A DNA stretch of 63,318 nucleotides, counting the filler, from Octopus bimaculoides (taxonomy: Eukaryota): the NCBI RefSeq assembly GCF_001194135.2. It is 6 parts of 5 records of this genome, joined end to end, with 100 filler letters (N's around TTAATTAATTAA, not from the genome) between each part and the next. Parts side by side here need not be neighbours in the genome. Positions count along the whole stretch, not along the records: positions 46,857 to 53,998 come from NC_068981.1; 5 more parts are not named here. The stretch is one strand, 5' to 3'. The notes beneath the pieces are model-generated. The model made no database searches and was not told the DNA's origin. It saw only the letters and a program-made list of their open reading frames with translations. Below are positions 7,243-54,139 of the stretch, one piece after another. Both the position numbers and the translations under genes were made by a program. The stretch's first letter is position 1; every line of letters begins with the position of its first letter.

Positions 7243-7309
7243 GGCAGTGCCCCAGTATGGCCACAGCTCATGAGCTGAAACTAGATAAAATGAAAAATAT
7301 ATATATGTA

Positions 7310-46856: not shown

Positions 46857-46910
<54 letters not shown>

Positions 46911-47120
46911 GATATAAAATAAAAAGTCTCTCCTCAAACATTCATGAAGAACGTCTATAGCATACGTCTATAACATCACATCACTAAAACTGCAAATTAA
47001 CGCTCGACTTCCTCATCTGGGAAAAACGTTTATTCAATTCATAGTACCTTCTACAGAAGATAGATATAACTTGATTAGCGTAATACAGTTCTATATTTAG
47101 GAGATGAGGAATTATGTACA

Positions 47121-47243
47121 TTATTTACATTATTTACATTTGACGGATATTTGTCCTCATCTTGTTTGTTGTTAACACTTGTTTGGTGTTAACAACAAAC
47201 AAGATGAGGACAAATATCGGTCAAATGTAAATAACGTAAATAA
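47121..47243. repeat. Near-perfect hairpin: 58 bp arms, 7 nt loop
   Basis: 47121-47178 versus reverse complement of 47186-47243: 2 mismatches by eye. Confidence 0.95.
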
Positions 47244-47531
47244 AGTAAACAATGTTGATTCGCTTATTTCACAAATATCTGGATCAGTGCAGCTGGTGCT
47301 CATAAGCAATGTAGAACGGAAATTCACTATCGTCATCACCATCATCATCGTCGTCGTCATCATCATTATCACCAGCATCATCTTCCTCACATCTATCATC
47401 AGCATTATCATATACAATGTAAGAATTCCGCTCATCCTCAACATAATCAATATAACAATCCACATTATCTTCAACGCTCTTACTAAGCAAAAGCGCCCGT
47501 CGCCACCATCACCTTTACAGAAAATATCATT

Positions 47532-47565
<34 letters not shown>

Positions 47566-48880
47566 ACACCATCATCACCACCACAACCATCACCATCACG
47601 ACGACGACGANNNNNNNNNNCACCACCACCACCTCCACCACCATCATCATCATTTGTTAAAGTATTATTTGCAGCTGACGCATTAATTTATGCATGCATG
47701 TACGTACGTACGTATGTATGTATGCATGTATGCACGTATGTATATTATGTTTTATAAGTATATGAATTCTTCCTGTAAACACGACGCTACTCCTTTTATC
47801 GCTGGACTGTGTGCAACAACAATGAACGAGGTGTTACATGTTGAATTTCATAATAGTCTTGGGTGTGTTTTACTGTTCTGCTTACAGATCATATTATCAC
47901 AGCGAATTAGCTGTTAGCTTCCTTGTCTGAAGCTCACCGTTTTCGATATTATAACTTTGTCATTCATTATTTACACAAATAATTAGAGGCCCAAATTTCA
48001 AATTATAATCTAGGTATAAGTTGCAAGTTCTGTAGCATGTATCCTTAAATCCTGTCTTTCTTGCTGACATCCAAACATATGTTCACATCTGAAGTGCAGC
48101 TGACCTTTATAACGGTACCTCTTTTTTTCCTTCCGGTCGAAAGCAACTACATTAGGAATGTCGTATTTGTATTTGGTGAAGTTTTAATGAGAATATTTTA
48201 TAAATATTCGTTGTGTCGAAATTTATTTACTCAACAACAAAAATAAATATATTCTATATTTACGCCAGACCAAGTTTTTCCTCGGATGGCTTTGTAGATT
48301 CTTTTAGAAATATCTTGCTAGATTGGAAAGGAGTATATTTATGATATCTCTTCGTAGCATCTGGTCACATGTGCAAAATTTTCGACAGGAAAGATATAAT
48401 CTACTGCATTTTCAAGTTTCAAAGACTTTTCGTCTGTTTTATATGTTATTTTGTGGTTGTCTTCTGAATACGAATACCAAAAGCGTATCCTATAAAATGT
48501 CGCATATGTAACAATCCCAAATCTAAGAGAGTTACACTTCCTGTCAGGATAAACACTATCCTCAAATTATGCATACCCGTAGCATGTTGTTCCCTTCAAA
48601 TTTGTGCGCTTGTTTGATATATTCGTTTTAGCCCCAGTGTTTAACAGATGCGGTTTGAGTGACACCATAACAATTAAAGGCTGTTCATACCAATCTCTCC
48701 TTCCGCTTAGCATCTGAACCTTGCAATTGATATCGCAATACGACAGACTTTCATATCTATGGGGCAGATTTCCTCTACAGAACATTCAAATCCTGGTACC
48801 GGTATTGATATCCTAAATGCAAATGGACGTTTTTTTCTTTTATTTATTTATTTATTTTTTTGCCTTTTGATGTTCATCCG

Positions 48881-49280
48881 CAGGAGTGGCTGTGTGGTAA
48901 GTAGCTTCCTTACCAATCACATGGTTCCGGGTTCATTCCCACTGCGTGGCACCTTGGGCAAGTGTCTTCTACTATAGCTTCGGGCCGACCAAAGCCTTGT
49001 GAGTGGATTTGGTAGACGGAAACTCAAAGAAGCCCGTCGTGTATGTGTATATGTATATGTATGTGTGTGTATATGTTTGTGTGTCTGTGTCCCCCAACAT
49101 CGCTTGACAACCGATGCTGGTGTGTTTATGTCCCCGTAACTTAGCGGCTCAGCAAAAGAGACCGATAGAATAAGTACTAGGCATCCAAAGAATAAGTCAT
49201 GGGGTCGATTTGCTCGACTAAAGGTGGTGCTCCAGCATGGCCGCAGTCAAATGACTGAAACAAGTAAAAGAGTAATAGAG
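48881..49280 (+). mobile_element. SINE family A, best-preserved full-length copy
   Basis: tRNA-like A box (tggctgtgtgg) and B box (gggttcattccc), body, central TA/TG tract, 3' module ending gactgaaacaagtaaaagagtaatagag. Confidence 0.95.
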
Positions 49281-49416
49281 TATAGTTTCTTTTTTTTCTT
49301 TACCGAAATGGTTTTTAAATCTCCGAGAAAGAGTTCTATTTATGTAGATATTGTTTTACATCATCCGCCATAAATACAATTTATGAGTTTGAGACAAAGG
49401 TCTGGTTAATAATGGC

Positions 49417-49628
49417 TTCGAATTTTGGCACGAAGCGAGCAATTACGGGGCAGGGATTAATCGATTATATCGACACCAGAGATTAACTGGTACTTATTTT
49501 CTCGACCTCGGAAAGGACCTAAGACAAAGTCGACTTTGGCGGAATTTGAACTCAGAACATAAAGACGGACTAAATGTCGCTAAGCATTTTGCTCGGTGTG
49601 CTAACGATTCTCACAGCTCGCCACCCTA
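49417..49628 (-). mobile_element. SINE family B, full length
   Basis: ggcggaatttgaactcagaac...gctaacgattctcacagctcgccacc. Confidence 0.88.
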
Positions 49629-49659
49629 AGTTTGATTAATATTGATTTGTAGATTTAGG

Positions 49660-50058
49660 GGTATTTCGTCTGTCTTTACGTTCTGAATTCAAATTCCGCC
49701 GAGGTCGACTTAGCCTTTCATCCTTTAGGGGTCGATTAAATAATTACCAGTTACGCACTGGGGTCGATTTAATCAGCTTAATCCGTTTGTCTGTCTTTGT
49801 TTGTCCCCTCTATGTTTAGCCCCTTGTGGGCAATAAAGATATAAGAAACGTTAGCATGCCGGGCGAAATGCTTAGCAGTATTTCGTCGGCCGTTACGTCC
49901 TGAGTTCAAATTCCGCCGAGATCGACTTTTCTTTTCTTCCTTTCCGGGTCGATAAATTAAGTACCAGTTGCGTACTGGAATCGATCTAATTGACTCCCCC
50001 CTCCCGCCCCGCCTCCCAAAAAAGAATTCGGGCCTTGTGCCTAGAGTAGAAAAGAATA
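49660..50058 (+). mobile_element. Dimeric SINE family B (unit-linker-unit)
   Basis: Two family B units joined by the linker tgtcccctctatgtttagccccttgtgggcaataaagatataag. Confidence 0.88.
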
Positions 50059-50226
50059 TTGATTTGAAGATTTAGCGCTTTGCCACAGGCAACATTTTTC
50101 ACTCAACGTCATAAGTTCATTTTTCTCTTAAAACTATACACCTCAATAATTTGGAGTGAAGGTACTCTTTATGTTTTACTCAATGTCTGTATTACGTCTA
50201 AATGTATCATGTATAAATGTATATTT

Positions 50227-50345
50227 GCTTACGTCCATATCACGCTGAGAGCACCGGTTCTCGTCCGATCACCGAAGTTAAGCAACGTCGAGCCTAGTGA
50301 GTACTTAGATGGGTGGCCACTTGAGAAACTAGGTGCTGTAAGCGT
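50227..50345 (+). rRNA. Full-length 5S rRNA-like copy, probably a pseudogene or SINE head
   Basis: GCTTACGTCCATATCACGCTGAGAGCACCGGTTCTCGTCCGATCACCGAAGTTAAGCAACGTCGAGCCTAGTGAGTACTTAGATGGGTGGCCACTTGAGAAACTAGGTGCTGTAAGCGT, 119 nt. Terminal helix GCTTAC/GTAAGC, conserved CCGATC..CGAAGTTAAGC (box A), helix CCTAG/CTAGG. Box C region is altered and there is no T-run terminator. Confidence 0.92.
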
Positions 50346-50407
50346 CCCACACTAACGGTGGTTCATCAGTATGGCCGCATCTCTGAGCTGAAACTAAAAA
50401 AAAAAAA
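50227..50407 (+). mobile_element. Candidate 5S-derived SINE (5S head + SINE-type 3' tail + A12)
   Basis: After the 5S copy comes ...cagtatggccgcatctctgagctgaaact(A)12, matching the tail at 7243-7290 (cagtatggccacagctcatgagctgaaactag) and the family A SINE 3' end. Confidence 0.55.
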
Positions 50408-50929
50408 TGTTCACATATGTATGTAATAAGTATAAATCTAAATATGTATGTATTATGTATAAATCTGTATATGTATTCTCCCCGTTCATTGGCTGCTCGC
50501 CTTAAAGGCAAGGGAGAGAATCGTCATGATAGACTCCAGTTATTTTTCTCCTGTCAGAGAAAGGAAAAAATTGCATCTTTATGTATTTATTTGATTAAAT
50601 TTTCTCTTAATTTTTATTTTATTCATAGAGTGTTTACCGTATGTATCTGTGCATATAATATGTATTATATATAAATCTATACATGTATATATGTATATAT
50701 GTATATATTATATATAAATCTTTGTATGTATGTAATATACATGTATGTATGTATGTATCAAGGTATGTACGTATGTATGTATGTATGTATGTATGTCTAT
50801 ATGTGTATATGTTCCATTCAACATTTATCAGATATTATCAATTTCTGCCCCCACCCTGGGACCAGTAGTATATGGAGACGGGTGACTGAATGAGAGGATT
50901 TCGTTCAAGTCATTATTGTATCGTGTGTG

Positions 50930-51950
50930 GGAGGCGGTGGAGGAGGTAGTAATAATGTTGATGGTGGCCGCGGTGTTGGTGATGCCGGCGATGATGGCAG
51001 CGGCCGTGGTAGCGTTGGCGGCAGTAGCGGTGATAGTGGTAGCGGTAATAGTGGTAGCGGTGTTGTTGTTGTTGTTGTTGTTGGTAATGGTGGTGGAGGT
51101 AGCACTGGCGATGTAGTGGCTGTTGAAATAATAGTTCCATTGCTGCAGTTGTTATTGTTGATACTGCTGTTCTTGGCGGCGGTGGTCGTGGCGATAGCGG
51201 AGGCGGTGCGGTGGTGGTGGCGATAGCGGAGGCGGTGCGGTGGTANNNNNNNNNNNNNNNNNNNNNNNNNNNNNNNNNNNNNNNNNNNNNNNNNNNNNNN
51301 NNNNNNNNNNNNNNNNNNNNNNNNNNNNNNNNNNNNNNNNNNNNNNNNNNNNNNNNNNNNNNNNNNNNNNNNNNNNNNNNNNNNNNNNNNNNNNNNNNNN
51401 NNNNNNNNNNNNNNNNNNNNNNNNNNNNNNNNNNNNNNNNNNNNNNNNNNNNNNNNNNNNNNNNNNNNNNNNNNNNNNNNNNNNNNNNNNNNNNNNNNNN
51501 NNNNNNNNNNNNNNNNNNNNNNNNNNNNNNNNNNNNNNNNNNNNNNNNNNNNNNNNNNNNNNNNNNNNNNNNNNNNNNNNNNNNNNNNNNNNNNNNNNNN
51601 NNNNNNNNNNNNNNNNNNNNNNNNNNNNNNNNNNNNNNNNNNNNNNNNNNNNNNNNNNNNNNNNNNNNNNNNAAACTGTTGTTTATAGTTGTGACAGTGA
51701 TGACGAAGGTGTTTACAGCGGTCATGATGGTCATAGTGACCGTCATATGGATGATGATGGTGATGATAATGACGATGGTGAAGGTGGTGAAGATGATGAT
51801 GATGAGAAAGACGACGACGACGACAATGATGATGACGATGATGACGATGATGACGACGATGATGACGATGAAGATGATGATGATGATGATGATGATGACG
51901 ATGACGATGATGATGATGATGACGATGATGATGACGATGATGATGATGAC

Positions 51951-51980
<30 letters not shown>
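50930..51980. repeat. Trinucleotide low-complexity block (GGT/GGC/GTT, then GAT/GAC), with N gap
   Basis: Direct inspection; source of the spurious poly-D/H/S/M ORFs. Confidence 0.9.
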
Positions 51981-51983
<3 letters not shown>

Positions 51984-52220
51984 GTGTATCTGTCAATGAG
52001 TGCTTGTGCATAGGTGCACGCATACACCACATACACACGCATACACACACACACACACACACACACGTATACATATCTGTAGATGTCTCTCTCATTCTTT
52101 TTCTCTCACTCTTTCTCTTTCTCTCTCTCTCTCTCTTTATGTATTTGTAAATCTACGTATCTCTATCTCCTCTCACTTTCTCTCTCCTCTCTCTCTCTCC
52201 CTCTCTCTCTCTCTCTATCC

Positions 52221-52268
<48 letters not shown>

Positions 52269-53573
52269 ACATAGATAGATAGATAGATAGATACATACAT
52301 ANNNNNNNNNNTACATACATACATACATACATACATACATACATACATACATGCATATTGCATATATATTACATATACTTGCATATACATAAACATATCT
52401 ATTTGCATATAAATATATGCACAAAACCGCCATTTTTTCCCCAATTATTTCTGTTTGTGCTTTTGAGACATACAAGTAGAATCCAGTTTTTTTAGTGTTT
52501 GGTAACGAACATGGGAAAATCAAACCCTGATGTATGTATACAGCCACAGTTAGGTTTAGAGGCGGTGGTGGTGGTGGGAAGAACCCCTCCTACCTCCATC
52601 TTGTCGATGAGGTAGTACGAGTTTGAGAGGCTTTTGTACGTAGCGTTATAATGGGCCATACGATGTGTCGTGCATGTATGCGTTCTGTGCTGTTGTACGC
52701 AGTGAGATGTCATATGGTGTAGTGAAACGAGAGGAAACGGTGGCGGGGGCNNNNNNNNNNNNNNNNNNNNNNNNNNNNNNNNNNNNNNNNNNNNNNNNNN
52801 NNNNNNNNNNNNNNNNNNNNNNNNNNNNNNNNNNNNNNNNNNNNNNNNNNNNNNNNNNNNNNNNNNNNNNNNNNNNNNNNNNNNNNNNNNNNNNNNNNNN
52901 NNNNNNNNNNNNNNNNNNNNNNNNNNNNNNNNNNNNNNNNNNNNNNNNNNNNNNNNNNNNNNNNNNNNNNNNNNNNNNNNNNNNNNNNNNNNNNNNNNNN
53001 NNNNNNNNNNNNNNNNNNNNNNNNNNNNNNNNNNNNNNNNNNNNNNNNNNNNNNNNNNNNNNNNNNNNNNNNNNNNNNNNNNNNNNNNNNNNNNNNNNNN
53101 NNNNNNNNNNNNNNNNNNNNNNNNNNNNNNNNNNNNNNNNNNNNNNNNNNNNNNNNNNNNNNNNNNNNNNNNNNNNNNNNNNNNNNNNNNNNNNNNNNNN
53201 NNNNNNNNNNNNNNNNNNNNNNNNNNNNNNNNNNNNNNNNNNNNNNNNNNNNNNNNNNNNNNNNNNNNNNNNNNNNNNNNNNNNNNNNNNNNNNNNNNNN
53301 NNNNNNNNNNNNNNNNNNNNNNNNNNNNNNNNNNNNNNNNNNNNNNNNNNNNNNNNNNNNNNNNNNNNNNNNNNNNNNNNNNNNNNNNNNNNNNNNNNNN
53401 NNNNNNNNNNNNNNNNNNNNNNNNNNNNNNNNNNNNNNNNNNNNNNNNNNNNNNNNNNNNNNNNNNNNNNNNNNNNNNNNNNNNNNNNNNNNNNNNNNNN
53501 NNNNNNNNNNNNNNNNNNNNNNNNNNNNNNNNNNNNNNNNNNNNNNNNNNNNNNNNNNNNNNNNNNNNNNNNN

Positions 53574-53610
<37 letters not shown>

Positions 53611-54139
53611 CTTAAATACATGCACGCATACATAGATAGGTATATACATAAAAACAAACACACAGACATACACATATCTATATAGAGAGATAGAGATACA
53701 TATACAAATGTATGCACACATGTAAAGGTATACATATATACATATATGTATATAAATACATACATGCATACATGCCGAGCGTCATACTAATACATCCTTT
53801 TGTTATTTACACCACCTGTCCTCGTCTGTTGTTGTTTTTTTGTATATTCTCCCATATATATATATATATATAATACAAAGAACATATATATACATGTATA
53901 CACACATATATGTACATACTTACATCTACATGTGTATATACATGCATATCAGGGTACAGGACGTTAGAACAATAAACTACAGACAACGGAACGAACACNN
54001 NNNNNNNNNNNNNNNNNNNNNNNNNNNNNNNNNNNNNNNNNNTTAATTAATTAANNNNNNNNNNNNNNNNNNNNNNNNNNNNNNNNNNNNNNNNNNNNGT
54101 AAAGGGAAAAGAAGAAAGAAAAAACAGAACCTAATGCAA

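What the first reader, a model, noticed from the sequence alone, without database searches (positions are those of the whole stretch)
50227..50407. 5S rRNA fused to a SINE tail: candidate cephalopod SINE3
Seen: a complete 119 nt 5S sequence, solitary and not in an array, lacks the oligo-T terminator and continues through ~10 nt into ...cagtatggccgcatctctgagctgaaact and A12. This tail matches 7243-7290 and is a variant of the tRNA-SINE family A 3' end (cagcatggccgcagtcaaatgactgaaac). Helix I and the CCTAG/CTAGG helix are kept, while box C shows GGATGGG>AGATGGG and there is a 1 nt deletion against the recalled mollusc consensus. Established: SINE3 elements use a 5S internal Pol III promoter and a LINE-derived 3' end. 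I know of none described in octopus. Inference: head swapping put a 5S promoter on the local SINE tail, either as a family or as a one-off template-switch chimera. No clear TSD seen.
Basis: partly seen in the sequence, partly recalled or inferred. Interest (0 to 1): 0.72.

Follow-up and report, generated by a model that had tools for sequence, protein, structure and literature searches.

The report
5S rRNA-headed retroposon copy in octopus
A complete 5S ribosomal RNA sequence in an octopus genome fragment is fused to the short 3' tail used by a local tRNA-type SINE plus a poly-A run and was inserted as one unit, so it is a reverse-transcribed 5S chimera; whether it is one copy of a real SINE family or a one-off accident could not be tested here.

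Summary
50227-50344 is a full-length 5S rRNA sequence (Rfam 102 bits; real 5S genes score 107-120). It has no oligo-T terminator. A 6-nt linker follows, then a 44-nt tail (50351-50394) that is 78% identical to the 3' end of a tRNA-type SINE in the same piece (49217-49261; far above shuffles), then T and A12. The 181-nt unit interrupts an AT-rich minisatellite present on both flanks, so it arrived as one insertion. No target-site duplication is visible.

This is the architecture of a SINE3, and it parallels the moth HaSE3 (5S head on the 3' part of a tRNA SINE). The defining test, many dispersed copies with the same junction, could not be run. A control pattern for the abundant octopus SINE tail found nothing in the searchable DNA collections, so they hold no octopus DNA. 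Protein-route searches reached no second copy.

Internal evidence does not separate a SINE family from a one-off template-switch chimera. The head carries 7 substitutions at otherwise invariant positions, 5 of them in box C.

My estimates: SINE3-type family copy about 0.5, one-off chimera about 0.33. If it is a family, it is a new member of a known kind. A 5S-headed SINE is already described in a scaphopod mollusc.

The parts
50227..50344 (+). 5S rRNA-derived head, full length (118 nt)
   Evidence: Rfam RF00001, 102.2 bits, model 1-120. 106 of 120 aligned columns match the closest real 5S gene found, L001.
50276..50298 (+). Box A (head 50-64) and intermediate element (head 67-72) of the type 1 Pol III promoter
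   Evidence: Box coordinates come from established Xenopus 5S numbering (my knowledge). The sequence is identical to the real gene L001 except head position 63, where it agrees with L003 and L006.
50306..50323 (+). Box C (head 80-97), carrying 4 substitutions (81, 90, 93, 95) at positions invariant in three real 5S genes; a fifth lies at 98
   Evidence: The arm still folds.
50345..50350 (+). 6-nt linker TCCCAC between the 5S end and the tail homology; it stands where a 5S gene has its T-run
50351..50394 (+). 44-nt 3' tail, shared with a tRNA-type SINE and presumed to be the LINE reverse-transcriptase recognition region
   Evidence: Alignment to 49217-49261 has 36 matches in 46 columns, score 36 against shuffles 19.6 +/- 1.9.
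50396..50407 (+). A12 tail (preceded by T at 50395)
   Evidence: Direct reading.
49217..49261 (+). Homologous tail at the 3' end of the tRNA-type SINE 'A' (element about 48879-49280); comparator, not part of the insertion
   Evidence: The same SINE 3' end is exonised in an Octopus bimaculoides protein.
50184..50226 (.). Upstream flank: AT-rich degenerate minisatellite (TGTAT.. / TATAAAT units), the target of the insertion
   Evidence: 17/19 direct match of 50202-50220 to 50448-50466; repeat family D4.
50408..50480 (.). Downstream flank: the same minisatellite (~27-nt units), continuing at 50657-50758
   Evidence: family D4.
50543..50547 (+). First T5 run downstream; where a Pol III transcript started at 50227 would be expected to stop (~320 nt)
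   Evidence: The termination rule is established knowledge, and its use here is inference.

Best explanation
This is a copy of a SINE3-type retroposon. A 5S rRNA-derived head carries the internal type 1 Pol III promoter (box A, IE, box C). It is joined through a 6-nt linker to a ~44-nt tail of the kind carried by an octopus tRNA/CORE-type SINE, which is presumably the 3' end of their shared partner LINE, and it ends in poly-A.

The proposed cycle has three steps. Pol III starts at G1 of the head, reads through the tail and A-run because the 5S terminator is missing, and stops at a T-run in flanking DNA. The partner LINE's reverse transcriptase recognises the tail and/or A-run. It then copies the RNA into a new site by target-primed reverse transcription.

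The founder most likely arose by reverse-transcriptase template switching from a tail-bearing LINE or SINE RNA onto 5S rRNA, as proposed for HaSE3.

Shown: the anatomy, the tail homology, the missing terminator, and insertion as one unit into a minisatellite. Inferred: transcription, the identity of the LINE, the existence of sister copies, and the origin by template switch. This particular copy is probably inactive, because box C has 4 changes and there is no conserved upstream context.
For: The 5S head is full length with a near-intact fold, only slightly below real genes. Box A and IE are unchanged. There is no T4 in 181 nt. The tail homology to a resident SINE's extreme 3' end is highly significant and ends at the same CTGAAAC. 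A12 follows. Both flanks belong to one minisatellite, so head, tail and A-run entered together. The tail is a distinct variant (78% identity, one replaced 9-nt block), not a fresh copy of the neighbouring SINE, which fits a separate lineage with its own tail. [quoted passage not shown] SINE3 families have arisen repeatedly (PMC7245038, PMC10886601), and one occurs in a mollusc (PMC5804259). Size-biased sampling (inference) also favours a family: an element met by chance in 7 kb of a ~2.7-Gb genome is more likely to be from a multi-copy family than a singleton.
Against: No second copy was seen, and copy number could not be tested. No TSD was found. Box C carries 4 substitutions at positions invariant in real genes, and these could equally be post-insertion decay of a pseudogene. 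The fold-preserving pattern of those changes is not significant, since 42% of random transition sets do as well. Type 1 promoters depend on upstream context, so retroposed 5S copies are poor founders (argument quoted in PMC3272025). I found no cephalopod SINE3 in text searches, although octopus repeats have been surveyed several times.
Confidence: 0.5

Rival explanations
1. One-off (or few-copy) chimeric retropseudogene. A LINE reverse transcriptase began copying a tail-bearing SINE or LINE RNA at a nicked target, jumped after ~45 nt onto a cellular 5S rRNA molecule and copied it to its 5' end. This is the Buzdin-type bipartite chimera known from mammalian genomes. It has no progeny and is not a family.
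For: It predicts the same anatomy as the family reading: a full-length small RNA at the 5' side, a 5'-truncated retroelement end plus poly-A at the 3' side, and a single insertion. The 7 private substitutions and the 1-nt deletion in the head are compatible with neutral decay of a dead copy. No other copy was found by any route, though those routes were uninformative. Template switching to small RNAs is documented (cited in PMC4824008, PMC4758252).
Against: Singletons are far less likely than family members to be hit in a random 7-kb piece (inference). Such chimeras normally carry TSDs where the LINE makes them, and none is seen. A non-templated 6-nt linker has to be assumed.
Confidence: 0.33
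2. Two independent events: an old solitary 5S pseudogene or orphon, and later a severely 5'-truncated SINE or LINE insertion that happened to land right at its 3' end and removed the terminator.
For: The octopus piece is dense in SINE insertions, with four other copies within 1.4 kb. No TSD brackets the whole unit.
Against: It requires an insertion within about 6 nt of the 5S 3' end by chance. The minisatellite abuts exactly the 5S 5' end and the A-run 3' end, as expected for one insertion. A solitary 5S still needs its own origin.
Confidence: 0.08
3. A functional variant 5S rRNA gene, or the normal 5S rDNA repeat unit.
For: Strong Rfam score and intact box A and IE.
Against: It is solitary, not tandem. 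It has no T-run terminator for 200 nt beyond the 5S end, whereas all real genes examined have one within 0-10 nt. It has five substitutions in or next to box C at invariant positions.
Confidence: 0.02
4. Assembly artefact: a chimeric join of reads in a draft, gap-rich assembly.
For: The piece has several N gaps and is repeat-rich.
Against: The nearest gap is more than 800 nt away. The junction has no shared repeat that would mislead an assembler. The structure is biologically coherent from head to A-tail.
Confidence: 0.03

Closest known systems
HaSE3 (Helicoverpa armigera and related moths), a SINE3 family; PMC3272025, PMC5786205
   Same: A 5S rRNA-derived head is joined to a 3' region shared with a tRNA-derived SINE of the same genome (HaSE1). 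A template switch from SINE RNA to 5S rRNA is the proposed origin. Some copies lack TSDs, and abundance is low relative to the tRNA SINE.
   Different: HaSE3 shares both body and tail with HaSE1 at 94% identity, and its partner LINE (HaRTE1) is identified. Here only ~44 nt are shared at 78% identity, no body is present, the tail ends in poly-A rather than an RTE-type short repeat, and the LINE is unknown. HaSE3 is shown to be multi-copy; this element is not.
SINE3 of zebrafish and other vertebrate 5S-headed SINEs (Kapitonov & Jurka 2003; cited in PMC7245038)
   Same: A 5S head with box A/IE/C serves as the internal Pol III promoter. The 5S terminator is lost, and a LINE-type 3' tail is present.
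   Different: The vertebrate families have long bodies (Deu domain and others) and CR1/L2-type tails. This element is a minimal head+tail unit of 181 nt.
'Ante' SINE of the scaphopod Antalis entalis (PMC5804259)
   Same: A 5S RNA-derived head in a mollusc.
   Different: Ante is 388 bp with CORE and V domains. It belongs to a different molluscan class.
Simple L1-mobilised 5S SINEs of fruit bats and springhare (MEG-RS, Ped-1; Gogolevsky et al. 2009, cited in PMC10946416)
   Same: Short 5S-headed elements ending in an A-rich tail.
   Different: Those lack a LINE-specific tail and rely on the poly-A (my knowledge). This element carries a specific 44-nt tail.
Bipartite chimeric retrogenes made by LINE RT template switching (Buzdin et al. 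2003; cited in PMC4824008, PMC4758252)
   Same: A full-length Pol III small RNA (U6, 5S and others) is fused to the 3' end of a retroelement plus poly-A.
   Different: Those are individual events, usually with L1-type TSDs. They are not transcribed and propagated as families.

Membership tests
SINE (SINEBase definition, PMC3531059) | Short (<1 kb), interspersed, non-tandem repeat | tested here: met
   181 nt. It is the single 5S match in the 7-kb piece, with no array. 'Repeat' status itself was not shown.
SINE (SINEBase definition, PMC3531059) | [quoted passage not shown] | not testable with these tools
   A control pattern matching the abundant SINE-A tail found 0 hits in metagenome and viral contigs and 1 chance bacterial hit, so no octopus DNA is searchable. 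The junction scan and the protein routes are therefore uninformative.
SINE (SINEBase definition, PMC3531059) | At least 60% identity to tRNA, 5S rRNA or 7SL RNA over at least 60 nt | tested here: met
   106/120 columns match a real 5S gene. Rfam 102.2 bits over the full model.
SINE (as opposed to an RNA pseudogene) | Extra non-RNA-gene sequence, or diagnostic substitutions shared among copies but absent from the cellular RNA gene | tested here: inconclusive
   An extra 44-nt tail is present. There are 7 private substitutions relative to three real 5S genes, but neither sister copies nor the true octopus 5S sequence were available.
SINE3 | Intact internal type 1 Pol III promoter (box A, IE, box C) | tested here: inconclusive
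   Box A and IE are conserved. Box C has 4 changes at invariant positions. The effect on TFIIIA binding was not tested.
SINE3 | 3' tail shared with a partner LINE | not testable with these tools
   The tail is shown to be shared only with a tRNA-type SINE. No octopus LINE sequence was reachable.
SINE3 | Pol III transcription of the whole element | not testable with these tools
   Only the absence of an internal T4 was shown.
LINE-mediated retroposon (general) | Target-site duplication | tested here: not met
   No direct repeat abuts both ends. The best repeat is 41 nt beyond the A-run and is explained by the flanking minisatellite. A TSD is not obligatory for several LINE clades, and some HaSE3 copies lack one (PMC3272025).
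Functional 5S rRNA gene / rDNA unit | Oligo-T terminator directly after the gene; tandem organisation | tested here: not met
Template-switch chimeric retropseudogene | Full-length small RNA at the 5' side, 5'-truncated retroelement end plus poly-A at the 3' side, single copy | tested here: inconclusive
   The structure criteria are met. Single-copy status is untestable.

The most novel reading that the evidence does not exclude
Octopus carries a genuine, multi-copy 5S-headed SINE (the first cephalopod SINE3). It would have been born independently by placing a type 1 Pol III promoter on the tail lineage used by the dominant octopus tRNA/CORE SINEs. That would be a lophotrochozoan parallel to the moth HaSE3, and a natural test of how promoter type affects SINE success in a genome famous for SINE expansion.
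Probability: 0.45. Interest if true: 0.45.

Novelty: new member of a known kind. Interest (0 to 1): 0.35.

Why it matters
If it is a family, it adds cephalopods to the short list of lineages with 5S-headed SINEs: vertebrates, some insects, fungi and one scaphopod. It would also give a second clear case, after HaSE3, of a 5S head grafted onto the tail lineage of a resident tRNA SINE. In practice, such copies would need masking in 5S rRNA gene annotation of cephalopod genomes, because this one passes the Rfam threshold by a wide margin. If it is a singleton, it is an ordinary by-product of LINE activity.

Tried and rejected
1. **Finding sister copies.**
   - Translations of the element in all six frames were searched against the 5.8-billion-protein set. 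They hit only generic 5S-derived ORFs from metagenomes and a moth, and none covered the linker or tail.
   - Exact look-ups of four window ORFs found no record.
   - DNA scans for the junction (metagenome contigs) and for the tail variant (viral contigs) returned 0.
   - A control pattern matching both this tail and the abundant SINE-A tail also returned 0, plus one chance bacterial hit. These zeros therefore say nothing about copy number.
2. **Sampling octopus genomic DNA.** SINE-derived peptides gave one hit, an O. bimaculoides UniRef protein with an exonised SINE-A 3' end. This confirms the taxon, but no contig is on record.
3. **True octopus 5S sequence.** The 1983 Walker & Doolittle paper (PMC326244) is not held. 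Text searches for sequence strings found nothing.
4. **Selection on the head's fold.** The five changes in helix IV keep the arm stable. Random sets of five transitions do so in 42% of trials, so this was rejected as evidence.
5. **Conserved hairpin in the tail.** The folds of the two tails differ and are not better than shuffles, and the whole-element fold is unremarkable.
6. **TSD search.** Only minisatellite-derived repeats were found.
7. **tRNA detection.** ARAGORN and Rfam did not call the heads of the neighbouring SINEs. Calling them tRNA-type rests on box A/B-like motifs read by eye.
8. **Spurious hits.** The many miRNA-family 'hits' are all far below their gathering scores and lie on microsatellites or a palindrome, so they were rejected.

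Full report
**What is there**

The piece (46857-53998) is repeat-rich, gap-containing draft sequence. Rfam's 5S_rRNA model matches 50227-50344 on the + strand over its whole length (model 1-120), at 102.2 bits and E=3.5e-22, with only three non-canonical pairs. It is the only 5S match in the piece. For scale, four bona fide 5S genes recovered from metagenome contigs, each followed by a T-run, score 107.5-120.5 bits.

Right after helix I, where those genes have their oligo-T terminators, the element reads GT CCCAC and continues without any T4. The first run of T>=4 is at 50543-50547.

From 50351 to 50394 the sequence aligns with 49217-49261. That is the extreme 3' end of a tRNA-type SINE ('SINE-A', about 48879-49280) lying 1 kb upstream in the same orientation. 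Both stretches end in CTGAAAC.
- The alignment has 36 matches in 46 columns.
- The local score is 36, against 19.6 +/- 1.9 (maximum 25) for 300 dinucleotide shuffles searched against the whole piece on both strands.
- T and A12 follow at 50395-50407.

The 5S is 118 nt, the linker is 6 nt, and the shared tail is about 44 nt rather than 29.

**Taxon**

A peptide translated from the SINE-A 3' end hits a UniRef protein of Octopus bimaculoides in which that SINE end is exonised (...LAKETDRISTRLTKNKSWDRFARLKAVLQHGRSQMTETSKRR...). The 'octopus' assignment is therefore sound.

**Insertion context**

No target-site duplication abuts the two ends. The best direct repeat (50202-50220 vs 50448-50466, 17/19) lies 41 nt beyond the A-run. 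It is explained by a degenerate ~27-nt AT-rich minisatellite (TGTATGTATTATGTATAAATCT...) that occupies both flanks and recurs at 50657-50758 (family D4).

The minisatellite stops exactly at G1 of the 5S and resumes exactly after the A-run. Head, linker, tail and A-run therefore entered as one 181-nt unit. This is what reverse transcription of a single chimeric RNA, or a template jump during one reverse-transcription event, would give. It argues against a 5S pseudogene and a truncated SINE meeting by chance.

**State of the head**

Against three real 5S genes, box A and the intermediate element are unchanged. Seven substitutions fall at positions invariant in all three genes (head 8, 23, 81, 90, 93, 95, 98), and there is a 1-nt deletion near position 102. 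Five of the seven lie in or next to box C / helix IV.

The helix IV-V arm still folds to the canonical shape, at -14.5 kcal/mol against -14.9 for the closest real gene. I tested whether that is evidence of selection. After reverting the five changes and applying random sets of five transitions in the same 21 nt, 42% of sets fold at least as well. It is not evidence of selection.

The real octopus 5S sequence could not be obtained. Some of the 'private' changes may therefore be native to cephalopods. From memory, Drosophila 5S carries the 81A/95T pair, which is a lead and not a test. Box C changes may weaken TFIIIA binding in this copy (inference).

**Is it a family?**

This is the decisive question and I could not answer it.
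- Six-frame translations of the element found only generic 5S-derived ORFs, and none spanned the linker or tail.
- Window ORFs are not on record.
- The junction and tail-variant DNA scans were empty.
- A control pattern that also matches the very abundant SINE-A tail was empty in the metagenome and viral collections, and gave one chance hit in a bacterial MAG.

These collections simply contain no octopus DNA, so the negative results carry no weight.

**Mechanism and rivals**

The architecture is that of a SINE3: a 5S head supplying an internal type 1 Pol III promoter, loss of the terminator so that transcription runs through a LINE-type tail, and an A-rich end.

The closest described analogue is HaSE3 of Helicoverpa. 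It has a 5S head on the 3' part of the resident tRNA SINE HaSE1. Its authors attribute it to template switching from SINE RNA to 5S rRNA, some copies lack TSDs, and it is much rarer than its tRNA sibling (PMC3272025; PMC5786205).

The octopus tail is only 78% identical to SINE-A's, with one 9-nt block replaced (GTCAAATGA vs TCTCTGAG). The two tails more likely descend from related LINE or SINE subfamilies than one directly from the other. No conserved tail hairpin is detectable.

The main rival is a one-off Buzdin-type chimera made by a single template jump. It predicts the same anatomy and would leave a decaying, unique copy. Nothing in this single copy separates the two readings.

I lean slightly to the family reading (0.5 vs 0.33) for three reasons. 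An element met by chance in 7 kb is more likely to be multi-copy. The tail is a distinct variant. SINE3 births are recurrent (PMC7245038, PMC10886601).

The other rivals are unlikely: two independent insertions (0.08), a functional 5S gene (0.02; no terminator and no array) and an assembly artefact (0.03).

**Comparison with what is known, and novelty**

Reviews list 5S-headed SINEs in fish, reptiles, mammals, insects and fungi (PMC7245038, PMC10946416, PMC5063351). One mollusc case exists, the scaphopod element 'Ante' (PMC5804259).

Text searches found no cephalopod SINE3, but Repbase and Dfam could not be consulted. At best this is a new member of a known kind. At worst it is an ordinary retro-chimera.

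Interest is modest (0.35). Such copies pass Rfam's 5S threshold and would be mis-annotated as 5S genes.

Noticed in passing
window 47111-47253: Near-perfect 143-bp palindrome with 68-nt arms, 93% complementary, and a 7-nt loop. It looks like a foldback or MITE-like element, or a hairpin-RNA locus. It produced a spurious below-threshold MIR841 hit.
   Followed up: no
window ~49420-49630 (-), ~49655-49800 (+), ~49845-50060 (+): Three copies of a second octopus SINE ('SINE-B'...GAGTTCAAATTCCGCCGAG...GTCGATAAATTAAGTACCAGTT...) are packed within 650 nt just upstream of the 5S element, one of them inverted (D5, I1, I3). Its antisense frame is open for about 70 codons in two copies.
   Followed up: partly
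window 48879-49280: SINE-A carries ACCTTGGGCAAGT, the CORE-domain signature (CCTTGGG is quoted as conserved in PMC5786205), so it is probably an OR-type octopus CORE-SINE. It also has an internal (TGTATG)n microsatellite at 49039-49089. Its 3' end is exonised in an O. bimaculoides liprin-alpha-like UniRef protein.
   Followed up: partly
window 50184-50226, 50408-50480, 50657-50758: A degenerate ~27-nt AT-rich minisatellite (TGTATGTATTATGTATAAATCT...) that the 5S element interrupts.
   Followed up: yes
window 47319-47673, 50920-51245, 51700-51985: Long imperfect trinucleotide tracts (CAT/CAC; GGT/GGC; GAT/GAC) that give long spurious ORFs. There are assembly gaps at 47612-47621, 51246-51672, 52302-52311 and 52751-53573.
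   Followed up: no
P0002 (Eumeta japonica hypothetical protein, NCBI/UniRef): An annotated 407-aa moth 'protein' is largely the translation of eight or more tandem 5S-like units, from either a 5S array or SINE3 copies mis-annotated as coding.
   Followed up: no
L003 1670-2163 and 3473-3591; L004: In an unidentified eukaryote from a metagenome, a 5S gene sits about 1.3 kb from a histone gene with its 3' stem-loop. This is a 5S-histone linked repeat unit.
   Followed up: no
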